From: Paramoeba atlantica
Lineage: Eukaryota > Protista > Discosea
Direction: 5' to 3'
NCBI GenBank assembly: GCA_977017575.1
Contig: CDRNVI010000041.1
Coordinates: forward strand, 62,001-126,000
Length of the DNA: 64,000 nt
Each line of letters starts with the position of its first letter. Position 1 is the first letter of the stretch. This document shows, one piece after another, positions 34,210-47,344 of this stretch. The notes under the pieces are model-generated. The model did not search any database and was not told the origin of the DNA. It saw only the letters and a list, made by a program, of their open reading frames with translations. The position numbers and the translations under genes were made by a program.

Positions 34210-35355
34210 GGCACTTCCTCCTGCAGAATAGGTTACAGTTCAAATGTATTGATTTATGTATTGAGTTCGGTGGGGTGTAGCAAAAATTCCCTTTTCATAG
34301 ATGGAAGGTCATTAAAGTGATGGATGAAGATAGGTGGAAGGTCAGTGGGAAAATGTGGTTCACCTACGGGAATGGGTGAAAGCAGTAAAGCGTGAGAGGA
34401 GTGTTCTGGGGGGAAAGGTGGAGGAGAAATCTCAACAGGTACGCTCTTTAACCGAGAAGTGCAACATAAAGTTGGAATTGCAACGGAAAGGTGAACGACA
34501 ACGACGTGCTACTAATATTTTTTGAAGAAGTCACCTTTAATTTAAAGATGGGAAGTGGCGTTGTATTTTAGAACGTACTGTGCAACCGCTGTCAACATAT
34601 AAACCGTTTATTTATAACCATTGCTTTTCTTCCTGGACGTGATACTATGTTTGAAAGAACATTATGCAAAGTGTCAAAACTTTCATTTCGAGTGTATACG
34701 GCAGCCAAAATCTCACCAATTTCATTGTGAACCACAAAGTGAGAACGAAACGGTGCTTCTCCACGTAGCCGAATGCACTTTGCGGTCTCGAAAGTATGAT
34801 ACATTGCAAGCACTGTACTAGTAAGCTCGGACGTATGATTGTCGCACTCCACCTGGCGCTGCTGGAGTAATGAAATCAAAACATCCTGAAAATGATCCAC
34901 TGACGGAGTCATCCATTCTTGTGAAATTCGATTTGAAATCGCTTCCACGCAATTAGGATCCCAGCGAAATCCATATTTTTCCGTGTGCTTTAATTCAGAA
35001 AAGTATCTTTCATCGCGCTTATTACTCAGATATTGCAACATCCACTGATGGTACCATGAAATTCACTCATATTAGAACCACTAGTTCCTATTTCCATAAT
35101 GGCCATCGAAAGTCGTCTAGTCATCCCCAATTTCTCAGTTTTAATAATAGGAAATATGAAGTTCAGGCTCAATAGTACACAACTTTCATAGGAACTACTA
35201 AGTTCAGACTCAATAATAGAAACACATTTCAGTTACATGTACTACTGAGTTTACTATTGAGTTTTTGCAATCCAGATGCGTACAACTCAATAGAGAACTC
35301 ACTAGTGACTCTTCCACTCAATAGTTGCTGTCATTATGGCGGAACAAACACACAC
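34210..35355 (-). mobile_element. internally deleted second copy of the Mutator-like element, head-to-tail with the full copy
   Basis: 34210-34525 repeats 35356-35670; ~34545-35150 repeats the transposase (37718-37771 and ~38529-39097); 35153-35355 repeats 39911-40106. Confidence 0.9.
34545..35150 (-). pseudogene. Mutator-like transposase fragment
   Basis: about 10 substitutions in ~142 aa versus the full copy, including catalytic MDHTF->MYHTF; frameshifted at the AMVI site; truncated at both ends. Confidence 0.88.
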
Positions 35356-35961
35356 GGCACTTCCGCCGGCAGAAGAGGTTACAGTTCAATTGTATTGATT
35401 TATGTATTGAGTTCGGTGGGGTGTAGCAAAAATCCATTATTTCATTGATGGAAGGTCATGAAAGTCAAGGATGAAGATAGGTGGAAGGTCAGTAGGAAAA
35501 TGTGGTTCACCGACGGGAAAGGGTGAAAGCATAAAAGCGCGAGAGGAGTGTTCTGGGGGGAAAGGTGGAGAAGAAATCTCAACAGGTATGCTCTTTAGCC
35601 GAGAAGTGCAACATAAAGTTGGAACTGCAACAGAAAGGTGAACGACAACGACGTGCTACTAATAATTTTTGGAGACATTCATGATTTTTGCGATTGCACT
35701 TAAAGGAAGAACATGTATATTAAGTTTTTTAGTAAGTACCAAGTTTACTGAGTCAAAAACCGAAAAAGAGGGAAAAGTCAGGGGGCGGAGATCAGTCAGG
35801 AAGGAGGTGTAGCGTTGATGAAGGTGCAGAGTCGTGCGTATTTTTTAAACTATGAAGACAAAATTAGGAACCTAATCTTTAATTTATCCTTTACGTATTC
35901 CTTTAACTACTGTTTTTACGAAATGTTTCTTAAAAAGCAAATTCTCCTTTGCCTCAACGGA

Positions 35962-37771
35962 TTACAGAGCAACATTTTCCGTATTCTCAAAGCCGTCTAC
36001 TTCTATTCGCGAATCTCTATTCGGACATTTGCGTCCTCTCTTTTTTCTAGCATCCTCTTTTGCGCGAAGCTCGCCCATTATCTCATCATGCGACTTCACG
36101 TCCTCCGCGCATTCCTTGTAGCAAAGTCTGTTCTGATACGCAACCCGTAACTGATTAAAATCTCGAGGAAATCTATACTGGTCCTCATTTTCTTTGACGA
36201 CGGAGCTGAATCTTGATAAAACTTTCGGCCAAGGTATGTGCCTCGAAGATTTGTCGCGCACTTCATCGATGACACATTGCAGGAGCAAGCGCACTTCAAG
36301 GGGATTGAATTTCACGATCACGTTTCTTTGGCGAGGATCAATTCTTGGAGCATGTAAATGTGTTGCCAGGTGACATGCGTTGCTATTTCCTGTCGCGGTA
36401 AAATGTTGTACAGGTAAGTCATCAAACATTATGATCTCCTCGTGCGCCCCCAAACTTACATCAAAATCTGTATCAAAAGTTTTAAATATTCCTGCACCAG
36501 GGATATCAAGTACGCAAACACCGCATATTCTGTGCCTCTGCGGAGTTGGTGATACGGAATCGAAAGGAACCACTAGATATGGTACGTGTGAAAGCTCGTG
36601 CAAAACGAGTACAGTGCTTGAAATGACATTGGCAAGAGAGCGAACTAGGGGAAGAAATAATTGCCCGTGCGAAACCTTGGTTATAACTTCCTCGACGTCG
36701 TTCTCGGGCTTGCTCAAGTGTTCAAGAACTCGTTCGAACGTCGTATCTTTGTCCACCCGCGATGTATCGCACCGCAGAATACAGGGATCTCCCGCACACA
36801 AGTATTCAAGTGTGCTCATCATTGACGCTGCGGTGCACTCTCCACCTAGGAAACGCACCTTTTCCTCGTGCTTAGTTGGTGTAGCCGAAAGTGCGAAGTT
36901 AAATTCCACATCGTCTTTGCCAAGAAATACGGGCTCGCAACCAAACTTATTTTGCGCCCAGCTGCGAACATTACTCAGCTGATTGTCAGACAAGGAATGT
37001 GGGATAAGTGCATATCCATCCCCAGATTGAACAGGGTGAACATATTGTGTGAAGAACAGTTCATGAGTCGTTAGTTGTTTCGCCACAGGGAGAAGTGCAA
37101 AAGGACTATTACATAATCTTGCATCGTCCGCCCCCAGGAAGAGAGAAGAGAAGGTTTCTTTCAAGGTTCGAAACAACAGAGCGTCGAAACACATCGTATC
37201 CGGCGCTGATTTGAATCTCACAGCACATTTCACATTACTTCGATAAATAAAGCTCCTTGTCAGCGCGTCTACAGTTTCTGCTGAGCTACGCGCGCGAAGC
37301 TTCACTTTAGCTTTCAAACGAGAATGAAAACTTTCACAAATGTTGGTTCCTCGGCTGGAACGATACACCATATTCTTATCCACGCGCGTCAAATTCACAT
37401 CTGTAGGGTCACTGAGGCAGTCCCGCTCGATGTGGGCTATTGCGTACGGCCAGAGAGAAGCTAACTTGGGGTTCCATGTAAAGATGTCCGAATATTTTTC
37501 CTTCAGGAGTTCCATTTTGGAAAGTAATTTTGTCGGACGTGGAATAACTTTCTCATGCGCATCAAGATGTTCCTTTTTTGACAAAGCGATAGTAAGAGGC
37601 TCTACTACAGATCGGCAAAGCTCGGTGTAAAACATTTTCTGCCGATTTGATGCTGAAGTGCGTGGGATAACAGCTGCGAAACGGTGCAGCCAATGCCATA
37701 AATCGCATTTAATATGTGCAGATGGAAAGTGGCGTTGTATTTTAGAACGTACTGTGCAACAGTTGTCAACA
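35962..37771 (-). CDS. Mutator-like transposase, C-terminal part
   Basis: 37770 downward reads VDNCCTVRSKIQRHFPSAHIKCDLWHWLHRFAAVIPRTSASNRQK in frame into the 557-aa ORF at 37635 (HIERDCLSDP, RGTNICESFH). Confidence 0.85.
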
Positions 37772-37773
37772 TA

Positions 37774-37877
37774 CAGGGGTGGGCGCCTTCAGAGTGGGGG
37801 GGTCTAAAATTCGTAAAACTTGACCAATTTTGGAAAGTAATAGCGCATTCGAGAGCTCTCAAGTAGTCTGGTGTAAT
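37774..37877 (+). repeat. left terminal inverted repeat (104 bp)
   Basis: CAGGGGTGGGCGCCTTCAGAGTGGGGGGGTCTAAAATT...GTCTGGTGTAAT is the reverse complement of 38423-38526. Confidence 0.95.
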
Positions 37878-38001
37878 GGCAACATCCGTTTCCCGTTTTT
37901 AGACATTCGAGATAAATGACAGAAAAACAAGGAATTTATTTTTCCCCGAAGATGCAATTTTTCAGTTTTTTTGGCTTTTTTTTAGTTTTTTTGCGCCGTT
38001 A

Positions 38002-38308
38002 ATGCCTCAGAAACGTGTACGATCGCGAACATCACGGTTTCCCTTCCAGAGAGATGCTTATTCACCACCTGGGAAGGTAAGGCCGTCGCATCGCATGCTT
38101 CTCGTAGACCATTACTTTCGTTCTGGGTCCTACAATGCTACAGCATTCTCTCTTCTATCGAGAGATAGAAGATCTCCTCTCTTCTATCGAGAGTGCATAC
38201 GAGGCACTTCAAACCGATCTCAAGAGTACTTGCGTGAAGACCATAAAGAGTGTCTCCAAGCGCTTTCAAATCGTTATTGAGAAAAAAGGGGGAAATTGTG
38301 GGTACTGA
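38002..38308 (+). pseudogene. Tc1/mariner transposase stubs (HTH start joined out of frame to the extreme C-terminus)
   Basis: HRMLLVDHYFRSGSYNAT resembles a mariner N-terminal HTH start; 38165-38308 reads IEDLLSSIESAYEALQTDLKSTCVKTIKSVSKRFQIVIEKKGGNCGY*, like the Tc1 C-terminus (SM.kR.qavI..kGG.TkY*). Confidence 0.75.
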
Positions 38309-38422
38309 GATTTTTTTTGGAAAAAAAGGACTTTTTCGCTTAAAAAATAAAGTTGCAATTCGTGTTTGGGACCATTCTAGTTTTCTTTGATTCCCGTAAA
38401 CTTTCGCAGAGTGCTTTTTACG

Positions 38423-38526
38423 ATTACACCAGACTATTTGAGAGCTCTCGAATGCGCTATTACTTTCCAAAATTGGTCAAGTTTTACAAATTTTAGACCC
38501 CCCCACTCTGAAGGTGCCCACCCATG
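38423..38526 (-). repeat. right terminal inverted repeat (104 bp)
   Basis: ATTACACCAGAC...CCCCCCCACTCTGAAGGTGCCCACCCATG pairs with 37774-37877. Confidence 0.95.
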
Positions 38527-39713
38527 TATATAACCATTGCTTTGCTTCCTGGACGTGATGCTATGTTTGAAAGAACATTGTGCAAAGTGTCAAAACTTTC
38601 ATTTCGAGTGTATACGGCAGCCAAAATCTCACCAATTTCATTGTGAACAACAAAGTGAGAACGAAAAGGTGCTTCCCCACGCAGTCGAATGCACTTTGCG
38701 GTCTCGAAAGTATGATCCATTGCAAGCACTGTACCAGTCAGCTCGGACATATAGTTGTCACACTCCACCTGGCGCTGCTGGAGTAATGAAATCAAAACAT
38801 CCTGAAAATGATCCACTGATGGAGTCATCCATTCTTGTGAAATTCGATTTGAAATCGCTTCCACGCAATTAGGATCCCAGCGAAATCCAAATTTTTCCGT
38901 GTGCTTTAATTCAAAAATGTGTCTTTCATCGCGCTTATTACTCAGATACTGCAACGTCCGCTGATGGTAATCGACGGCATACACTTCTTGCAGAATACCT
39001 TGAAATTCACTCATATTAGAACCACTAGTTCCTATTGCCATAATGGCCGTTGAAAGTCGTCTAGTCATCCCCAATTTCTCAGTTTTAATAATAGGAAAGG
39101 AATTTCGTGCCTTGTGGGACAGGCTGGAAATTAAGCTCTTTTCATCACTTGATATTACCTTACGACACTCAGTGCTACGACATTGATACACTTCACAAAG
39201 ATAGTACATTGGTGTCGAAAGATCAAAAATCCGACGCACAGGAGAAAGCTTCATGAAAGTCAATCGCTCTTTGCAATGAAGACAGTGTAGGTTTTCTTTT
39301 TCGCCTTGGCGCATGGGCGCCCATATGATCCATGGCAAGGTAAAAAACGTTTCCAATGAACTCCTAGGCTCCGGAGAAAAGAACCAAAGGGAAGTACATG
39401 TAGTTTTTGTTTTTAATTCTTCGTATGCCCTTCGAATTGCCGTGACTTGATGTGAAGACATTCCTGTTTCGAGCAAATGCGTCCAATATTTTGTCACTTC
39501 TGTTCGTTCGTGTGTGGTTTCTTCTGGGCGAGAAGCGAACCGACAAAGCTCCGAATTTTCGGCTACTACACGCGAAAGGGTGGTTGAAAGTTCGTTGTTC
39601 CTTTTTTCCATTTCCTCAATTTGTGTTTCTAGCTTTTTGATGCTTCCCGTAAGTTGCTTCTTTTCCTTGGCCATTGTTTGGATGACGTTCAGTAGGTCCG
39701 TTTCACAAGACAT
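38527..39713 (-). CDS. Mutator-like transposase, N-terminal part (coiled coil, Cys-rich DUF6729-like domain, first catalytic Asp)
   Basis: PWIIWAP..HCLHC..VRRIFDL..YQC..EC; VLAMDHTFETAK; HNEIGEIL; the track ORF runs 10 more codons into the inserted TIR (stop at 38493). Confidence 0.85.
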
Positions 39714-39924
39714 GACTTAAATAATCAGAAATCTAGAAATGATTTTTAGAGTACCAGGAAAGTTCAATAGTTTTGTTTGTAAAGTGATCATCTTGAACAG
39801 TCAGGGTACAATAGCTGAGGCTTTAAACTCTCAAACATGTACTAGAAATCGTTTCTGGGAAAACAATTTTGACGAAATCAAAAAAAATTATTGGACTACA
39901 AAAAAATTAGGTATGAAGTTCAGA

Positions 39925-40043
39925 CTCAATAGTACACAAGTTTCATAGGAACTATTAAGTTCAGACTCAATAATAGAAACACACTTCAGTTACTATTGAG
40001 TTTACTATTGAGTTTTAGCAATCCAGATGCGTGCAACTCAATA
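39925..40043. repeat. cluster of five CTCAATA/TATTGAG subterminal motifs at the transposon 5' end
   Basis: copies at 39925, 39966, 39994, 40007 and 40037; five more at 35168-35323; single copies near the other end (34259, 35405). Confidence 0.75.
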
Positions 40044-40121
40044 GAGAACTCACTAGTGACTCTTCAACCCAATAGTTGCTGTCACTATGGCGGAACTAAC
40101 ACACACACTAAAAGTAATTAA

Positions 40122-40155
40122 AATTAAGGCAACTTTAATTAAGGCAACTTTAATT
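40122..40155 (+). repeat. 15-bp tandem repeat AATTAAGGCAACTTT
   Basis: two perfect units; related copies at 41803-41835 and 34193-34206, inverted part-copy at 41857-41866. Confidence 0.85.
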
Positions 40156-40930
40156 TCTTTTTTAGGCTCTTCGTTAAACGCGGTGGTTGTTTTCAACTTA
40201 GAAGTCACTCATGCTGCGCGCTTCGCGTTGAAAACTACCACTGCGTTTAACGAAGAGCCTAAAAAAGAAAATTTAGCCTGGAAAGCTGAAGAAAACGGAA
40301 AGATTATAGCCAAAAATAGCCGATTTTCGGATAAAAATGGGGTCATTTCGCTCTCAGAGCACTGAATCCGACATTTGCGTGTGGGAAATTCGTCGCTTTC
40401 TTTATGTTCTGACGATGGACTTCAATCGGAAGCATCACCAAACCATTGCTATCAGTAAAAACGAAATCAGTTTCTATGTCAGGGCGTCGACGTCGTCCTC
40501 GCGGTCTGAAGGATCTTGCGTGATTTGAGGACCTGGGCGATTTTCAGTGTTTAGGACCTCGGCAAGAGTTGCTCTACTTGGGCCAAGTCTTGTAGATCTC
40601 GTTCTAGAGCTCGTTTTCGGGTAGACGTTTACGTTTACTTTCGTTGTAGTGAGATAAGTATTTTGAAAAAAAGGGAAACTGAGTGAAACGCACCATGAAC
40701 TCTTTCCCATTCGCGAGAAGCTCTGCTCAGACCTAAGCTTTTCGCCATTTGCGTCATCATGACCTTTTCCGCTAGGGAAGAACGGTACTGCTTTGGGGTC
40801 TCTATATAATTTAGGTCGCCCAAGACCTTCGCTTCAAGGATGGTGAGCAAATATGCATCCATTTTTAAAAAAAAAACGAAATCTACTTTGTAACATACTT
40901 TTGTTCCTCACCATCTTTTTCGCATTAATA

Positions 40931-40983
40931 CGACTTTTGTTGACACAACTTTTGTTGCCTCGACTTTTGTTGAGATAACTTTT
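40931..40983 (+). repeat. 15-bp degenerate tandem repeat (C[G/A]ACTTTTGTTG)
   Basis: CGACTTTTGTTGACA / CAACTTTTGTTGCCT / CGACTTTTGTTGAGA / TAACTTTT. Confidence 0.8.
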
Positions 40984-41468
40984 TCCCCCCTGTATTGGGC
41001 AGGGAATGCGACTCCAACCACACCATTCTTCCGACCCAAAAAGACCCCTTTTTTGTCCCCGAAAATTACGTTTTCGCATTTTTTGGTCAAAAATGGGTCA
41101 TTTTGGGAGGCGTATCACGGCTTCGGGAAGCTATATCTCGCTAAAGCAATGGCGTAGAAAGCTAGAATAGGTCCCAAGCTATCAAAATACAATAGGCGAA
41201 ACAATTTTAGAAAAATATTTTAGATTAATGCCATCGAAAGTGTACCCCAAAATTGATTTTTTTGACTTTTTTATAGTTTTCATTTCTTCACCCCAGATTC
41301 ATATTCTGGTGCCTTTGCAACGTTTTTTCACCCATTTTTACATGCTTTCGTATACCTAGTTCAAACCTTCCTCAGTGACCCACTGTCGACGGTGGTTCAC
41401 GCTTTCCCATTTGTAGTCCCTCCCAAAGACGAAAATTGTGACGAGCGCATTCTGTCCAAATTCTGGTA

Positions 41469-41520
41469 CTGTGACCCCCCCCCCTTTAATATGGACAGGA
41501 GGTATCCCCCCCTTTATTTA
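41469..41520 (+). mobile_element. solo MITE-like terminus related to the 49810-50136 element
   Basis: TA|CTGTGACCCCCCCCCCTTTAATATG followed by a second CCCCCCCTTTA; partner end not found in the window. Confidence 0.55.
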
Positions 41521-42231
41521 ACAATAAATATATTTCTATTTCTAACATCAAAAAATTTCTACAACCAGAAAAATTGATAGAAAAAAATAGAAAATACCTA
41601 AATTTGCTTCAGTTTCACCCTTTTCTCTCACACGTTGAACTGGTTGAAGACCGTAAAGGTAGGCGAAACATGCGAAGCTCGTCTAGAAAAGTTCGAAAAA
41701 CATGAAAAATGATCAGAAATTGAACACTTTTAGCAGAAATGTGATATTTATGCTACAAACGACAATATTTAAATAAGAACTGTTTTGGGCTTTTATCAGC
41801 ACCACTTTAATTAAAGCAACTTCAATTAAGGCAATAATTAATTTTTAAAACTGTTCTGCCTTAATTACGTTTATCCTTAATAACCGTTTCACCGGTAATT
41901 ATTATTAAAAAAATATTAAAACAGCTTTGAATTGGATAGGTCTGTTTCGCACTGAATTTTATGGTCAATACTTCATGCCGCTGTACAACTGAACTGAAAA
42001 TACATCATGTTGCCTATAATCCTATTTATAACCGGTCGAACTGTATTACTTCGTCTAATTATGCGTATTTCCTTACTACGAACTAGGCTTTCAAAGATGT
42101 GCTGTAGTTCAACTATAGGTTTAGAAAAAAGTTTCGCGCAAATTAAGTGCGCAAATTAATTATCAAAAATAATTGCAATCGTATTTCTAGAACATTGTTT
42201 AAATTACACATTTTTTATGAATTTGCAATGA

Positions 42232-43197
42232 ATGAGGCTTCGGACAAGCTTGGTGTCTGTCTCCATTTTTTTACTTCTTCATTTGGGGTTTTCCGTATCC
42301 ATTGGAGTGCAATGTTATAGTTCTTCTCTATGTAGGTTCCATCACATTGGGTGTGCTCCAAACAGAACAGTTCTTAATAATGGATTCCCAAAAGCGGATT
42401 CCAGTCACAGTTCAAATGCATATATCATTGTAGACAATTCTCCTCAGACTGCGGACCTCACTGAACCAAATACAATCGCGAATTTTCGGCAACGACACGG
42501 CAGAGTCGGAGGACATCGAAAGGGAATCTTATTCAAGAACAATGAAACTTCTCCGAATTGTATATTGCTTCGTAATGCGGCAGACGATGTGCTACGTGAA
42601 TTGGTACTAATGCAAGATACAATTCAGAAGTATTCAACCTTTGTGGAAGTATTGGAGAGTTTTTCGTCTGAACGTATTCTTCTCTATGGCATAGATTTTG
42701 AAAACTTACTTCGATGGATGGTGAAATGGTTGATTCTATTTGAAGTTACGCGACTATTTCTTGATATGTGCATCTCGTGCAGCACCTCTAAGAGACAAAA
42801 TGCTTTGGCCCTATCTGCAAAAAAACCCTCTACACCAAAGTTTTGGTTCTATCTCTTCACACATTACTGCCACAAAATTCAGCAACGTGAGCGCAGGTTA
42901 GATTTTTGCCTGTACATTGCCCAGTTCGTTCCTTTTTGTTTTTACATCATAGCTCTGTACCTCGCGATAAACACTTTGCAAAAGCAGTATGTTACTCTGT
43001 CTATTTTTACTATGAGTACATCCATCTTTCTCGGAGATTCCTCATTGTTACCGAGTTTTCTTGTTTCGATATTTGGTACCACTCTTTGGCTGATTAAGGA
43101 TAGCATTGGCAAGTTCTTTTACTGGACTCCTCATAACGAATTCTTGGCCTGCGAGCTTATTAACCCCGTTGAACACAACGGGATTCACTGGAATTAG
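42232..43197 (+). CDS. hypothetical membrane protein with predicted signal peptide
   Basis: 321-aa ORF with a hydrophobic N-terminus and several C-terminal hydrophobic segments. Confidence 0.6.
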   Translation: MRLRTSLVSVSIFLLLHLGFSVSIGVQCYSSSLCRFHHIGCAPNRTVLNNGFPKADSSHSSNAYIIVDNSPQTADLTEPNTIANFRQRHGRVGGHRKGILFKNNETSPNCILLRNAADDVLRELVLMQDTIQKYSTFVEVLESFSSERILLYGIDFENLLRWMVKWLILFEVTRLFLDMCISCSTSKRQNALALSAKKPSTPKFWFYLFTHYCHKIQQRERRLDFCLYIAQFVPFCFYIIALYLAINTLQKQYVTLSIFTMSTSIFLGDSSLLPSFLVSIFGTTLWLIKDSIGKFFYWTPHNEFLACELINPVEHNGIHWN

Positions 43198-43440
43198 ATG
43201 AATTTGTTATTTATAGAATTCCGTGAATACCATGAAGGTCAGTGAAGTATCATGAAGGTCAGCCGATATGCATTTATTGATAAGTGGTGAGCTTAGCACA
43301 GAAATTATCTAATGCACAAATTTTTCAAATGTTTGATGGCCACGCTTTCGTAGTTTCGTGGCATATTCATACCACTAAATCATCTAATTGTTCATAGAAA
43401 CATATTTTAAGTTTGTTGTTTCACCCGACATGAATTGCAT

Positions 43441-43794
43441 ATGCTGAGATTATCTTCAGTCCTTTTAAAAGCGCGTGGATATAAAAATTTGCGATCCGGG
43501 CAGAACAATTGGCGAATCGTTAAACGTCGCAGAGAGCTGGAAAAACGTCGCATTGAGCAAGCCCAGAATCATGTTCCCCCAACAGAGCCGACTAGAGCTC
43601 AAGCTCGTGCGCTTTATCGTTCTTTGCTGCGATATGCTTCAAAATCCCTCCGTCACACATCATTAAACTTCTTTCGTTCAATGCTGCGCCACGAGTTTAG
43701 CGTTACGGCTTCAGCAACATCAGGCCGTGTGCGAGGTATCATGTACGAAAAAGGGTGCTGGTTATTGAGGAACAAACTAGGCGGACTTCTTTGA
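43441..43794 (+). CDS. LYR-motif mitoribosome large-subunit assembly factor, L0R8F8/AltMiD51-like
   Basis: ALYRSLLR..LRHT..FF...LRHEF..EKGCWLLRNKLGGLL parallels human AltMiD51 (SLYRALLR..LRYT..IRREF..EKGLVFLNGKLGRII, from memory); MLRLSS presequence-like start. Confidence 0.75.
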   Translation: MLRLSSVLLKARGYKNLRSGQNNWRIVKRRRELEKRRIEQAQNHVPPTEPTRAQARALYRSLLRYASKSLRHTSLNFFRSMLRHEFSVTASATSGRVRGIMYEKGCWLLRNKLGGLL

Positions 43795-44259
43795 GATACG
43801 TGTCCACCTCATTCCTGTCATTGAGTAATGCTACTTTTTCCATGTGAAGGGTAGTTATAAATTATTTCTTGCTTCACCAGGAAAAAGAGTAAAACAGAGT
43901 AGCACAGAATATACTGGCTATCTAGTATACCATGTTCTTCGAGATACTTCTGCAAGTTTCCGAATACCTTGTTTTCAAAATTCATTTTTTGAGTGACACG
44001 CAACCCAGGGATGACACGCACGTACATCAATGTATTCATTATGCTTTCAATTCGTACATGTTTTAACGTGCAACACAGTCGTTTAGCTGCCTTTTTACGG
44101 CTTTATGATATTCCCTAAAGTCCTTTTTGTATTAGTTGGTCTCTTAAGTTATGCACAACTCATTTTCTTACAGTGTTGATCACATCATTTAGTCGTACGG
44201 CGCTTCCAAATAATGGTGCCTAGCTAATGTGAGCTTATTCATCAGTTCGTAATTATTTC

Positions 44260-45375
44260 ATGCTTCTAGAGACACTTCTGGACAAGCTCTCTAGGTTTGA
44301 GAACCATTTTCCAAAGAGAAAAATGTTGTTGCATCTTCAATTCAATGACTCGGAAGTAAATGATACGAAGCATATTCAGTGGAAACTAATTAGTACAGCC
44401 CCTGATGTAGCAAACGCCACATTGAGTTCTTCGATTCTTGAACAAGGCTGCATTGGTAATGATGGGTTTTCCTTTACCTACGTAGAGCAATTCGTCGCAC
44501 TACTGCGAAGTTGGCTAATGAAAATGCTCATAGTAACATCTGAGAAGAGAGAAGTACGAGGTTCTGTATTTCGCAGTATTACTCAAATAGAACTAAGCTT
44601 GTTACGGAACCTTCGGAAAGCCATAAACTTTCGAATCAATGTTGAGACTACACTGTGTGGCGTTTTTGAGTATACATCAGAAGATTTCATTCCCGATCGC
44701 ATTCACACAATGTGCGACATTTCAAATTTCCGTTCCGACAACATTGATTGCTCTACAAACACCGAAAATGATGCAGGAAGAATAAGTGCAGGGCATAGCG
44801 TGACCTCAGATTATTCAAATCACTCTGGAGCGGCTTCACTTGAGAATCTAATCTACTATTCTTTGGCTTCTTTTCCCACTACAAGAAATGGTTCACTTTG
44901 TTTTATGCTCGATTGGGACGCTGTAAAACGGCATACTTTCCAGTCTCAAAACGCTCTCTCTGCGGTGTATGCCTCACCTTCTTTTACCCTCAATCAAATA
45001 CTTAAGCCAACTGGCTTTGTATTGGCAGATGGGGACGTCAACAAGACATACATTATTACTCTCAGCGATGGAACAGTTTTCGATGCTCAAGAACGTTCTA
45101 TGTCCTTTCCATGCTGGATAGCCTCGAACTTTGAGAGTCTCATGTACTTGCTTGAGCACGCTCAATTTCCCCCAGTGATATGCAAAAAAGATCACACGGA
45201 GACACATAAGGCTTTGCGCCTAATGTCAAAATACATTAGGAATCTTCTTTTCCGGACGGGCAAGGCATCATACTTTCTTGCGAATGCCACAGAGTTACTG
45301 AATACGAATGACCGTGACAAATATATCCAATGTGATGCAGCTATTTACTCTTTTTTATGTAGTTTGCTCTTTTGA
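44260..45375 (+). CDS. hypothetical protein
   Basis: 371-aa co-oriented ORF; no motif recognised. Confidence 0.65.
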   Translation: MLLETLLDKLSRFENHFPKRKMLLHLQFNDSEVNDTKHIQWKLISTAPDVANATLSSSILEQGCIGNDGFSFTYVEQFVALLRSWLMKMLIVTSEKREVRGSVFRSITQIELSLLRNLRKAINFRINVETTLCGVFEYTSEDFIPDRIHTMCDISNFRSDNIDCSTNTENDAGRISAGHSVTSDYSNHSGAASLENLIYYSLASFPTTRNGSLCFMLDWDAVKRHTFQSQNALSAVYASPSFTLNQILKPTGFVLADGDVNKTYIITLSDGTVFDAQERSMSFPCWIASNFESLMYLLEHAQFPPVICKKDHTETHKALRLMSKYIRNLLFRTGKASYFLANATELLNTNDRDKYIQCDAAIYSFLCSLLF

Positions 45376-45853
45376 TAACGTGGTATACCTTGCAACTTGC
45401 CAATTGAAGTCAGTCTCTGAGTCAAAAAATCCGACCAATAATTATATTGCAGTATTTGCTCAAAAGAATCATTTTACGTCCGCCCCGGACGTATTGTCTT
45501 GTTTCAGTCATATTCCAACACACACTGGCCTTGCTACGAACACGTCCACGAAAGCTCGGAAGGAGTCGTTGTAGGATTGATAAAAAACTGGTAGTACAAG
45601 TGAAGTGGATTGGAGCAATTGACTTCCATTCTTTTGAAAATAACACCAGTAATTAAAATCTCTCGTGCAAAAACTATGCTGGGTATACCAGCTACGAGTT
45701 TGAAGTCTTTAGAAAATAAATGCAATACATCTGATACGCATCTTATATACAGGCCCTTTTGTATACGCTCTAACTCAAGCATGCACCTCGAACATTACAA
45801 AAATGTATGTACATTATACATTTGGCTTATTACTATAATCTAATGCGCAATAC

Positions 45854-47344
45854 ATGAGCCGTGCACTTGTTTCACTTATTTCCAATACGCCAACCTGTTC
45901 TATTTTAGTTACACTTTCGTCTGAATACCACGCGAGACCTACTGAAGAAGAGCTTGGTCGACATTTTGGACTGTACACTAAAAGACTGTTTTTACCTTCC
46001 CGCGATGATGCTATGTTCAGTATTCTTTTTGACTTTTCATCGCAAGAAGAAGCCATATGCAGCGTCGACAAATGCAGAGAGTCAATCAGCGTTTCTTCTG
46101 TTGACTTGATTGAAACTGCTTTCGTAAATATGCGCGTAATACAATTTTTAGCTGAAGGCGGGGCAGAGTTACTTCTCAAAGAGAAAGTACAGGTTCCATC
46201 AAGCTGGGCTAATGTTGGTAAAAGTGACGAATTCAGAAATCCTGAGCGGATTGAAATGAGGTGCGTGAAGTTTGGTGAACAAAAGTGCGAATCGGAGCAA
46301 ACGTCTTGCTATCGCGAGAATTCCTCGGAACAAAGCGGGCAATCTACTAATAATTCCCCAGCAACTCAAAGTACGGCAGAGGTAGGCTGCTCAAATTCCG
46401 ATGCTACAAACATTGACGCTCCCAGATTCAAAAGGCCAAAGAAGCTTTCAAAACATTTACTCTTGGAGAGTATGCCGATCTTATCTCTGGAAATGCGCCC
46501 TAAAACACCTACAGTTCGACCTATCGGAACTGGTATGCCCTACCTTATTGTTTTTTACGTACCTCTCAAGCTCAGTCTTGATCGATTATTTCGATTTTTT
46601 TCACTCTACGGCGATATTCTCACAATTAGACGGGTTACATCTCCTCTCGACCTTGCCTTGTCAGCTTTCAAGGGAAATATTGGCTCATCACGGGGTGAGG
46701 TGTCGCCCGTCTTGCTGAGGTATGTGACGGCGGACCAAGCGTGTTGCGCAGCAAATATGCTTCGCAGCTTTCCTGCTTCTCTTTCTCATCTGGGCATACG
46801 CTCCCTCTCTTGCATACAGGCACCTTCGAGGTTTCTGGACCGTTTTCGAACTGTAGCTGAAAGCTCAAGGAATGGTTTAGAGCGTTCCGCATCAGTAGCG
46901 TCCGAGGTGTATTCCATTGAAAGCGATCCGCGAGATACTGAGTGTCTTTCGCACGACTATTCAGTATCACATATCGATCACCGCTATGAGATGTCACCGC
47001 TTCACCCGCGGTTGGAGGCGCATCGCTGCCCTCCCACACGTTTCCTCTATGCTCTGAACCTTGCACCCGAGACCACAGCAAGCGACTTGAAAGAATGTAT
47101 TGAATTATCGGAATCGATGAATCAAGCGCTTAAGGTTCATTCTATTCGTATGCTAGAGTTCGAATCACAACAAACTCTTGAATCGTGCTCTATCGAATCG
47201 GAACGTGCGGCGGAACTTGAGTTCGAGGAAATATCGTCTGCCGTTGATGCCCTTAGCACGATTCATGACTTTGTTCTTAATTCACAGCCCTTAAAAATTG
47301 TCTTTTCTGCGCCCACTATACAACCAGCATGGCATCTGAGATAA
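45854..47344 (+). CDS. RRM RNA-binding protein, PTB/hnRNP L-like
   Basis: LSLDRLFRFFSLYGDILTIRR and PTRFLYALNLAPETTASDLKE resemble PTB-type RRM3 and RRM4. Confidence 0.6.
   Translation: MSRALVSLISNTPTCSILVTLSSEYHARPTEEELGRHFGLYTKRLFLPSRDDAMFSILFDFSSQEEAICSVDKCRESISVSSVDLIETAFVNMRVIQFLAEGGAELLLKEKVQVPSSWANVGKSDEFRNPERIEMRCVKFGEQKCESEQTSCYRENSSEQSGQSTNNSPATQSTAEVGCSNSDATNIDAPRFKRPKKLSKHLLLESMPILSLEMRPKTPTVRPIGTGMPYLIVFYVPLKLSLDRLFRFFSLYGDILTIRRVTSPLDLALSAFKGNIGSSRGEVSPVLLRYVTADQACCAANMLRSFPASLSHLGIRSLSCIQAPSRFLDRFRTVAESSRNGLERSASVASEVYSIESDPRDTECLSHDYSVSHIDHRYEMSPLHPRLEAHRCPPTRFLYALNLAPETTASDLKECIELSESMNQALKVHSIRMLEFESQQTLESCSIESERAAELEFEEISSAVDALSTIHDFVLNSQPLKIVFSAPTIQPAWHLR

What the first reader, a model, noticed from the sequence alone, without database searches (positions are those of the whole stretch)
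35962..39713. 998-aa Mutator-like transposase split at its catalytic Asp; removing one TA-bounded element restores it exactly
Seen: on the minus strand the gene reads ...GCA ATG GTT ATA TA|[753-bp element]|TA T GTT GAC... Deleting 37774-38526 plus one TA gives AMVI-Y-VDNCC...CDLWH... and joins two track ORFs into one stop-free frame of 396+45+557 = 998 codons. Established: D (DHTF), D (YVD), C/DxxH and E (TN..ESFH) is the Mutator/IS256-type catalytic layout. Inference: this is a large DDE transposase family with a Cys-rich DUF6729-like N-terminal domain, in what looks like a kinetoplastid. Trypanosomatid mobilomes are essentially retroelements, and to my knowledge only Merlin has been reported as a class II element in Bodo/Perkinsela. 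It may be a new DNA-transposon family for this lineage.
Basis: partly seen in the sequence, partly recalled or inferred. Interest (0 to 1): 0.85.

Follow-up and report, generated by a model that had tools for sequence, protein, structure and literature searches.

The report
Mutator-like transposon broken by a Tc1 insert
A 4-kb cut-and-paste jumping gene in a kinetoplastid-like protist, whose 998-residue enzyme is a distant relative of Mutator/IS256 transposases, has been broken in this copy by a small Tc1/mariner element; only one other DNA transposon type (Merlin) turned up in the papers I searched for this group.

Summary
A minus-strand gene (39713..35962) is interrupted inside codon 396 by a 753-bp element (37774-38526) with 112-nt inverted ends and a TA on each side. 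I did not build the joined frame. At least five uninterrupted copies elsewhere in the genome read through the site exactly as predicted (AMVIYVDNCC, 996-998 aa), and a duplicated or allelic locus (C36) keeps the empty site.

The host element is a real transposon:
- It is about 4.07 kb with fixed ends.
- It has perfect 8-bp target duplications at five different loci.
- It has clustered subterminal CTATTGAGT repeats.
- Differences between copies show pN/pS of 0.2-0.4.

The protein has a coiled coil, DUF6729 (62.6 bits) and a DDE core (D333, D398, E542, DxxH). A confident model (pLDDT 92) matches the IS256-family transposase ISCth4 best (Z 15.3, next 9.5). Pfam MULE stays below threshold (16.6 against 27.6 bits). 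I therefore call it a divergent Mutator/IS256-like clade, not a canonical MULE.

The insert is a deletion derivative of a 1558-bp Tc1/mariner element.

The host carries KMP-11 and a spliced-leader-like sequence.

First readers in this scan noted the same family on other DNA of this genome (s1-396112, s1-396159).

The parts
35356..40100 (-). Full copy of the ~4.07-kb DNA transposon (4745 bp here because of the 755-bp insertion and an ~84-bp shortfall near 35753). Its ends read GTTAGTTCCGCC...GGCGGAAGTGCC, an imperfect ~12-bp inverted repeat.
   Evidence: blastn against nine other copies places both boundaries at the same bases.
40101..40108 (-). Upstream 8-bp target-site duplication (GTGTGTGT on the minus strand).
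   Evidence: Identical to 35348-35355. Four other loci have their own perfect 8-bp duplications: ACAAATGT, ACAAAAAT, GTCACACT and GATATTAC.
35348..35355 (-). Downstream 8-bp target-site duplication. It overlaps by 2 nt the first bases of the neighbouring older derivative copy.
39924..40075 (.). 5' subterminal cluster of CTATTGAGT repeats in both orientations (8 matches in 150 bp). These are the likely transposase-binding sites.
   Evidence: Pattern search: 33 matches against 14.5 expected. All 7 exact matches in the 64-kb window lie in the subterminal regions of this element and of its derivative. One copy (GTATTGAGT) sits at each 3' end.
38529..39713 (-). Transposase codons 1-395: coiled coil (1-100), DUF6729 (residues 105-263 = 38925-39401) and the start of the RNase H-like core with D333 (38715-38717).
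37774..38526 (.). 753-bp non-autonomous Tc1/mariner element inserted in codon 396, with ~110-nt inverted ends CAGGGGTGGGC.../...GCCCACCCATG.
   Evidence: There are five other 751-756-bp copies at 98-100% identity, and a 1558-bp parent encoding a 285-aa protein that matches DDE_3 and HTH_Tnp_Tc3_2.
38527..38528 (.). TA target duplication, upstream side of the insert in gene sense.
   Evidence: All eight other copies examined (L002-L008 and the 1558-bp parent in L046) are also flanked TA...TA.
37772..37773 (.). TA target duplication, downstream side of the insert.
35962..37770 (-). Transposase codons 397-998 plus the stop. It holds D398 (37765-37767), CDLWH 418-422 (37693-37707), E542 (37333-37335), a poorly modelled lineage-specific region, and a helical Myb/SANT-like tail at residues 876-965 (36064-36333).
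34210..35349 (-). Older (88-92% identical), internally deleted, non-autonomous copy of the same transposon, lying head-to-tail against the full copy.
   Evidence: blastn pieces match the 3' end (34210-34528), an internal gene segment (34546-35154) and the 5' end (35155-35350). The same arrangement occurs at C36.

Best explanation
Window 35356-40100 is one copy of a recently active cut-and-paste DNA transposon family of about 4.07 kb. The family has about ten full or partial copies plus a five-unit tandem array in this 45.7-Mb genome. It makes 8-bp target duplications, has short imperfect terminal inverted repeats and carries clusters of a 9-nt subterminal repeat. It encodes a single intronless 998-aa transposase. 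The protein has an N-terminal coiled coil and a DUF6729 region with a conserved Cys cluster. Its RNase H-like DDE core is of the IS256/ISL3/Mutator structural type: D333 on strand 1, D398 after strand 4, DxxH at 419-422, an all-helical insertion domain, and E542 on the following helix. It ends in a Myb/SANT-like helical tail. Inferred mechanism: the N-terminal region and/or the tail bind the subterminal CTATTGAGT repeats, the DDE centre cuts and transfers the ends, and staggered cuts 8 bp apart give the duplication. This copy was inactivated when a 753-bp internally deleted Tc1/mariner element, mobilised in trans by its 1558-bp autonomous relatives, inserted at a TA inside codon 396. That separates the first catalytic Asp from the second Asp and the Glu.
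For: Shown:
- The interruption and its TA duplication.
- Natural intact copies of 996-998 aa that read through the site.
- An empty site in the duplicated or allelic locus C36.
- Identical element boundaries with five different perfect 8-bp duplications.
- Subterminal repeat clusters.
- pN/pS of 0.21-0.43 between copies that differ by 0.2-1.9%.
- DUF6729 at 62.6 bits against a cut-off of 27.
- 510 HMMER relatives sharing D333, D398, DxxH and RGTxxxExxH.
- An AlphaFold2 model of residues 95-660 with pLDDT 92 and pTM 0.88.
- All five significant Foldseek PDB hits are ISCth4 (E 4e-8 to 2e-5).
- VIA-align gives Z 15.3 over 270 residues for ISCth4, against 9.5 for the next hits (integrase, P element, Hermes).
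- After the DUF6729 clusters, the ESM Atlas shape neighbours are MULE, IS256 and ISL3 transposases, with TM 0.62-0.73 by the target over 330-370 residues.
- The only sub-threshold Pfam hits on the core in 50 relatives are DDE_Tnp_ISL3 (5), MULE (4) and ZSWIM1-3 RNaseH-like (2).
- The insert's parent is Tc1/mariner, and TA flanks occur at all eight other copies examined.
Against: - Pfam MULE does not reach its gathering score (16.6 against 27.6 bits).
- No WRKY/FLYWCH or SWIM zinc finger and no long inverted ends, which are typical of many MULEs.
- An 8-bp duplication is also produced by hAT, Zisupton, P and Merlin elements.
- No RNA data and no transposition assay, so activity is inferred from copy similarity and intact frames.
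- The DNA-binding roles of DUF6729, of the tail and of the repeats are inferred.
- The C-terminal 358 residues modelled poorly (pLDDT 48.7).
- The insert junctions were not bridged by any listed independent contig.
Confidence: 0.85

Rival explanations
1. The element belongs to the Kyakuja-Dileera-Zisupton (KDZ) group, most likely Zisupton, rather than to Mutator proper.
For: Zisupton makes 8-bp duplications (PMC12730594). The closest relatives P0003, P0020 and P0118 end in a Ulp1-like Cys-protease tail (weak Peptidase_C48 hit). One of 50 relatives has a weak hit to the KDZ-associated CxC3 cluster (E 0.0026). The protein is large and has conserved Cys clusters.
Against: The Pfam-A scan at E up to 10 listed no KDZ-associated family for this protein, and the scan of 50 relatives at E up to 0.1 listed none among the 25 families shown except that one CxC3 hit. 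All core-level Pfam, PDB and Atlas neighbours are MULE, IS256 or ISL3. The window protein itself has no Ulp1 tail.
Confidence: 0.08
2. It is a divergent hAT-type element. This reading was suggested by the 8-bp duplication and short inverted ends, and by another first reader's 'hAT-like ends'.
For: 8-bp duplications and ~12-bp imperfect inverted ends. The DxxH motif and the helical insertion domain also occur in hAT (my own knowledge). Hermes appears among the structural matches (Z 9.4).
Against: Hermes scores far below ISCth4 (Z 9.4 against 15.3; Foldseek E 2e-2 against 4e-8). No BED finger or hAT dimerisation domain appears in Pfam at E up to 10. No hAT family appears among the Atlas neighbours.
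Confidence: 0.03
3. The gene family is a domesticated or host multi-copy gene spread by segmental duplication, not a mobile element.
For: Some copies were indeed spread by duplication. C26a and C26b are identical and 12 kb apart. C59 shares their flanks. C36 duplicates the window locus over more than 7 kb. C12 holds a five-unit tandem array with a 6485-bp period.
Against: Five loci have unrelated flanks, the same two end points and different perfect 8-bp duplications. An internally deleted derivative keeps both ends. The element carries subterminal repeat arrays.
Confidence: 0.02
4. The interruption is an assembly artefact: a Tc1-type repeat wrongly placed in an intact copy.
For: Both sequences are multi-copy. 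Every short-read contig listed shows the uninterrupted form, and none bridges the junctions.
Against: The insert has complete ends flanked by an exact TA duplication at a TA of the target, as at all eight other copies examined. A chimeric join would not create that. The uninterrupted contigs are explained by the intact paralogues.
Confidence: 0.02

Closest known systems
IS256-family transposase ISCth4 (PDB 6XG8, 6XGW, 6XGX), the prokaryotic relative of eukaryotic Mutator
   Same: It is the best structural match over 270-320 residues (Z 15.2-15.3), including part of the N-terminal region as well as the RNase H-like core and insertion domain. Both have a DDE triad.
   Different: Sequence identity is only 11-16% and there is no sequence-level hit to any PDB chain. 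The protist protein is 2.5 times longer, with a coiled coil, a lineage-specific region and a Myb-like tail. It sits in a eukaryotic element with 8-bp duplications.
Eukaryotic Mutator-like elements (MULE; Pfam PF10551, PF20700)
   Same: Both have a DDE core with a (C/D)xxH motif about 20 residues after the second Asp. The target duplication falls in the 8-11 bp MULE range (PMC6446971). There are sub-threshold full-length MULE profile hits in this protein and three relatives. MULE clusters are among its structural neighbours. Relatives carry Ulp1- or OTU-type protease tails, as some MULEs do (my own knowledge).
   Different: It is below the Pfam gathering score. It has no WRKY/FLYWCH or SWIM finger and no long inverted ends. 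The N-terminal region is DUF6729. Kinetoplastids and Euglenozoa are not mentioned in the 2019 survey of MULE diversity.
DUF6729 proteins (Pfam PF20499) of chordates, cnidarians and fungi, often fused to a 3'-5' exonuclease or OTU protease
   Same: They share the DUF6729 domain and the same core. The Atlas model of a chordate cluster superposes at TM 0.81 over 525 residues. Of 50 relatives, 35-36 carry DUF6729.
   Different: Identity to these is only 16-25% over the aligned sequences. The window family has no exonuclease or protease domain. No paper in the searched library mentions DUF6729, so these proteins are not described there as transposases with known ends.
Zisupton/KDZ transposons
   Same: 8-bp target duplication (PMC12730594), a large Cys-rich transposase, and Ulp1-like tails in close relatives.
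   Different: Apart from one weak CxC3 hit in a single relative, the Pfam scans listed no KDZ-associated family. No direct comparison with Repbase entries was possible.
Merlin elements of Bodo saltans and Perkinsela
   Same: Both are class II elements in the kinetoplastid lineage. Merlin is the only one reported in the papers found (PMC8101967, PMC12278014).
   Different: Merlin has an IS1595-type transposase of a different superfamily. It is described there as few and apparently inactive copies. This family has several intact, near-identical copies.

Membership tests
Mutator/IS256-like transposases (superfamily level) | RNase H-like DDE core whose nearest solved or modelled relatives are IS256/Mutator-type transposases | tested here: met
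   ISCth4 is the top hit by Foldseek (E 4e-8) and VIA-align (Z 15.3 against 9.5 for the next). Atlas neighbours are MULE, IS256 and ISL3.
Mutator/IS256-like transposases (superfamily level) | Conserved D, D, E triad with a (C/D)xxH motif shortly after the second Asp | tested here: met
   D333 97/97, D398 98/99, D419 78/99, H422 80/99, E542 73/90. Spacing is D-65-D-144-E. The residues sit on the expected strands and helix of the model. The motif is not unique to Mutator (my own knowledge).
Canonical MULE (Pfam PF10551) | Match to the MULE profile at or above its gathering score | tested here: not met
   16.6 bits against a cut-off of 27.6 (E 0.011), although the match covers profile positions 2-98 of 99. 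Only 1 of 50 relatives reaches E 3.5e-5.
Canonical MULE | Target-site duplication of 8-11 bp | tested here: met
   Perfect 8-bp duplications at five loci. Range taken from PMC6446971.
Canonical MULE | Long terminal inverted repeats and a WRKY/FLYWCH or SWIM zinc finger (typical, not universal) | tested here: not met
   Only about 12 bp of imperfect inverted ends. No such Pfam domain at E up to 10.
DUF6729 (PF20499) | Match above the gathering score | tested here: met
   62.6-63.8 bits against 27, residues 105-263. All 14 genomic matches belong to this transposon family.
hAT | hAT-type core and C-terminal dimerisation domain, usually with a BED finger | tested here: not met
   No Pfam hit. Hermes scores Z 9.4, well below ISCth4. 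The 8-bp duplication alone fits.
KDZ / Zisupton | KDZ transposase domain and CxC clusters; similarity to Repbase Zisupton entries | tested here: inconclusive
   The scans listed no KDZ-associated Pfam family for this protein or among the families shown for 50 relatives, apart from one weak CxC3 hit. Repbase is not available, so a direct comparison was not possible.
Tc1/mariner (the 753-bp insert) | TA target duplication, terminal inverted repeats, and a parent encoding a DD(E/D) transposase with paired-type HTH | tested here: met
   TA flanks at all nine copies examined, the window copy included. 112-nt inverted arms. The parent ORF matches DDE_3 at 37.6 bits (cut-off 28.6); HTH_Tnp_Tc3_2 is just below its cut-off, 27.0 against 31.5 bits.
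Kinetoplastid host | Lineage markers in the same genome | tested here: met
   Two full-length KMP-11 genes at 150-151 bits, none in 14 control genomes. Three loci carry ...ACAGTTTCTGTACTTTGTTG|GT, which is spliced-leader-like. ORFs are long, intronless and on the same strand. The paraflagellar-rod profile found nothing, but that search rang nowhere and is uninformative. The species was not determined.

The most novel reading that the evidence does not exclude
DUF6729 proteins may be the transposases of an unrecognised, eukaryote-wide clade of IS256/ISL3/Mutator-like cut-and-paste elements. They are found in chordates, cnidarians, fungi and kinetoplastids, and often carry exonuclease or protease modules. 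On this reading, the kinetoplastid family is the first with defined ends, 8-bp duplications, candidate binding repeats and apparently active copies. That would make it a working model for the whole clade and a possible genetic tool for bodonid-type protists.
Probability: 0.35. Interest if true: 0.7.

Novelty: new variant of a known kind. Interest (0 to 1): 0.58.

Why it matters
The papers I found describe trypanosomatid genomes as free of DNA transposons and report only Merlin in their free-living relatives. This family has several intact, near-identical copies, clear target duplications and a non-autonomous derivative. Together with the Tc1 element that hit it, it shows that cut-and-paste transposition was recently active in this lineage. 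It also assigns a likely function (transposase of the IS256/Mutator structural class) and a complete element anatomy to a Pfam 'domain of unknown function' found across eukaryotes. Finally, it offers a natural candidate for a transposon-mutagenesis tool in kinetoplastid-like protists.

Tried and rejected
- No sequence search of solved structures gave a hit, with either the protein or the 99-sequence profile.
- Rfam on the window and on the spliced-leader-like loci found nothing.
- The paraflagellar-rod profile search was uninformative.
- The word-index search with the C-terminal 359 residues found only the protein's own cluster.
- The C-terminal model was too poor (pLDDT 48.7) to search. Only residues ~880-975 form a confident helical bundle, so 'Myb-like' remains a suggestion.
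- Literature searches for DUF6729 and for the spliced-leader variant returned nothing. A search on Novosib gave nothing usable.
- Sequencing runs are held only as contigs. There is no RNA holder and no contig across the insert junctions.
The downstream flank of the C36 copy and the ends of the C12 array were therefore not examined.
- A family-wide Pfam scan of the 99-sequence alignment exceeded the size limit, so it was run on the 50-sequence alignment instead.
- I considered reading the 13-bp extra sequence at the homologous site of the older derivative as a Tc1 excision footprint. I did not accept this, because it holds no CA...TG end letters of the insert.
- The two pieces were searched apart, and natural intact copies were used by reference.
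Full report
**1. Observation**

On the minus strand an ORF starts at 39713 and reads through 395 codons to ...GCA ATG GTT ATA (38529). It is followed by TA (38528-38527) and then a 753-bp element (38526-37774). After the element come TA (37773-37772) and T (37771). The frame then continues as GTT GAC AAC TGT TGC from 37770, open to the stop at 35964-35962, which is 602 codons.

The element has 112-nt inverted arms that are 95% complementary. The break is in Tyr396, two codons before Asp398.

The genome itself supplies the test:
- At least five uninterrupted copies have open frames of 996-999 codons: C70, C59, two on C26, and C51.
- The C70 copy reads ...SKAMVIYVDNCCTVRS... across the site.
- The C70 copy differs from the window's two pieces at 17 of 2991 nt.
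- Contigs from four public runs of one study also carry the uninterrupted form.
- None of the listed contigs bridges the insert junctions. The junctions therefore rest on the assembly and on the exact insertion anatomy.

**2. The host gene lies in a true transposon**

blastn of the window against the other copies gives the same two end points everywhere. The element reads GTTAGTTCCGCC...GGCGGAAGTGCC and is about 4.07 kb long.

Five loci with unrelated flanks carry five different perfect 8-bp direct repeats at those end points:

| Locus | 8-bp repeat |
|---|---|
| Window (and its duplicate C36) | GTGTGTGT |
| C70 | ACAAATGT |
| C47 | ACAAAAAT |
| C26 / C59 | GTCACACT |
| C51 | GATATTAC |

The ends form only a ~12-bp imperfect inverted repeat. 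The subterminal regions, however, hold clusters of CTATTGAGT in both orientations. All seven exact matches in the 64-kb window lie there (33 matches with one mismatch allowed, against 14.5 expected).

Directly downstream (34210-35349) lies an older, internally deleted copy that keeps both ends.

Some spread was by duplication rather than transposition:
- C26a and C26b are identical.
- C59 shares their flanks.
- C36 duplicates the window locus at 98.2% over more than 7 kb.
- C12 holds five tandem units.

Differences between copies are 0.2-1.9% with pN/pS of 0.21-0.43. This fits copies descending from functional transposase genes.

**3. The protein**

- Pfam finds DUF6729 at residues 105-263 (62.6-63.8 bits, cut-off 27) and weak coiled-coil families at residues 1-100.
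- On the intact natural copy the MULE profile matches residues 330-425 over its whole length, but below threshold (16.6 against 27.6 bits).
- An exhaustive HMMER search found 510 relatives. Only three are full-length at 34-36% identity. The rest form a large cloud at lower identity (mostly 22-35% in the HMMER table) over residues ~100-600.
- Of 50 relatives, 35 carry DUF6729 and 12 carry a 3'-5' exonuclease domain.
- The only sub-threshold hits on the core in those 50 are DDE_Tnp_ISL3 (5), MULE (4) and ZSWIM1-3 RNaseH-like (2).
- Conserved columns are C144, C147 and C178; D333 (97/97); N358/E359; D398 (98/99) followed by CC; D419 and H422; and RGTxxxE542xxH.

AlphaFold2 on residues 95-660 with 99 aligned relatives gave pLDDT 92 and pTM 0.88. 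D333 lies on the first core strand, D398 just after the fourth, and E542 on the helix after an all-helical insertion domain.

Structure searches agree on the fold:
- Foldseek against the PDB returned five significant hits, all ISCth4, an IS256-family transposase (E 4e-8 to 2e-5).
- VIA-align gave Z 15.3 and 15.2 for ISCth4, against 9.5 for the next group (retroviral integrases, P element, Hermes).
- ESM Atlas shape neighbours are first DUF6729 clusters of chordates and cnidarians (TM 0.81 and 0.60). After them come MULE, IS256 and ISL3 transposases, aligned over query residues ~10-495. DUF6729 therefore corresponds to the N-terminal part of those enzymes.
- The feature-based Atlas search agrees.

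The last 358 residues are lineage-specific and modelled poorly. The exception is a helical bundle at residues ~880-975 whose conserved pattern resembles a Myb/SANT domain. The closest relatives P0003, P0020 and P0118 extend further into a Ulp1-like protease tail that this protein lacks.

**4. The insert**

The 753-bp sequence has five near-identical full-length copies. Its two halves flank an extra ~830 bp in 1558-bp elements. One of these elements encodes a 285-aa protein matching DDE_3 above its cut-off and HTH_Tnp_Tc3_2 just below.

All eight other copies examined are flanked TA...TA at unrelated sites. The insert is thus an internally deleted, non-autonomous Tc1/mariner element. The C36 copy keeps the uninterrupted target GGTTATATATGTTGAC. 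The insertion therefore postdates that duplication, or is heterozygous if C36 is the other haplotype.

**5. Host**

- The genome (45.7 Mb, 248 contigs) has two full-length KMP-11 genes at 150-151 bits.
- Three loci read ...ACAGTTTCTGTACTTTGTTG|GT, resembling the kinetoplastid spliced leader as I recall it.
- The window shows long intronless ORFs on one strand.
- A relative of the transposase comes from the Apiculatamorpha spiralis transcriptome, a free-living prokinetoplastid by my own knowledge.
- I did not determine the species.
- The element sits antisense to its neighbours in the window, C36 and C70, but in the sense orientation at C51 and C47.

**6. Comparison and novelty**

The papers found state that Merlin is the first and only DNA transposon reported in kinetoplastids (PMC8101967). 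They also state that 57 trypanosomatid genomes hold none (PMC12278014). MULE-like ORFs are merely mentioned for Diplonema (PMC10161547). The 2019 survey of MULE diversity does not mention Euglenozoa and gives 8-11 bp as the MULE duplication length (PMC6446971). No paper in the library contains 'DUF6729'.

Zisupton also makes 8-bp duplications (PMC12730594). Apart from one weak CxC3 hit in a single relative, the Pfam scans listed no KDZ-associated family, and Repbase could not be consulted. I therefore file the element as a divergent clade of the IS256/ISL3/Mutator structural class, defined by DUF6729, and not as a canonical MULE.

Other notes of this scan report Tc1, IS30-like, hAT and MULE elements in the same genome. 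Two first readers noted this same DUF6729 family on other DNA of the genome. In this genome DUF6729 occurs only in this family.

**7. Verdict**

This is a new variant of a known kind. It is of moderate to good interest for transposon biology and kinetoplastid genomics.

Noticed in passing
window 34591-34624 (older derivative copy): At the site homologous to the TA hit by the Tc1 element, the older derivative copy carries 13 extra bases (GGTTA TAAATAAACGGTT TATATG) that include the near-palindrome TAAAC-G-GTTTA. It contains none of the CA...TG end letters of the 753-bp insert, so the origin is open.
   Followed up: partly
G000:C12:139080-168708 (L042, L043, L014, L019-L022): Five tandem units with a 6485-bp period each hold a copy of the transposon gene with an in-frame TAG near codon 150. 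Four of them are truncated after residue 486. A transposon copy has been amplified as part of a tandem repeat.
   Followed up: no
G000:C36:128000-137999 (L040) against window 35287-45941: The whole locus, with the full element and the adjacent derivative, is duplicated at 98.2% identity, without the Tc1 insert and with a frameshifted transposase (600 + 424 aa frames). It could be a segmental duplicate or the alternative haplotype.
   Followed up: partly
window 38146-38193, inside the 753-bp insert: The internal deletion junction of the Tc1 derivative (element positions ~373-396) holds a 17-nt direct repeat CTCTCTTCTATCGAGAG 29 bp apart. This looks like filler made during interrupted gap repair.
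   Followed up: no
window 40153-40390 and 40992-41221: Just upstream of the transposon lies a ~115-bp sequence that recurs in both orientations on C36, C47 and C80 (77-96% identity). It is probably another small repeat or MITE family.
   Followed up: no
window ~35753: The window copy lacks about 84 bp that all other full copies have in the 3' untranslated part (for example C26 460335-460419).
   Followed up: no
flanks of the Tc1-type copies (L002-L008, L046): Insertion sites show an extended palindromic preference around the TA: mostly ATA|TAT or CATA|TATG.
   Followed up: no
G000:C143:293138-293422 (L051): This is the only above-threshold Pfam MULE match in the genome (41.3 bits, a 700-aa frame with one TGA). 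It is a canonical MULE distinct from the DUF6729 family.
   Followed up: no
L047 (ENA ERZ24900291 ctg3677l): A contig from an ENA assembly record (ERZ24900291) carries an intact 998-aa copy next to Rpc34 and ABC-transporter genes. The Rpc34-sized (297 aa) and long (1449 aa) neighbouring ORFs sit in the same order as at C70, so the same or a very close organism appears to have been assembled independently with this insertion.
   Followed up: partly
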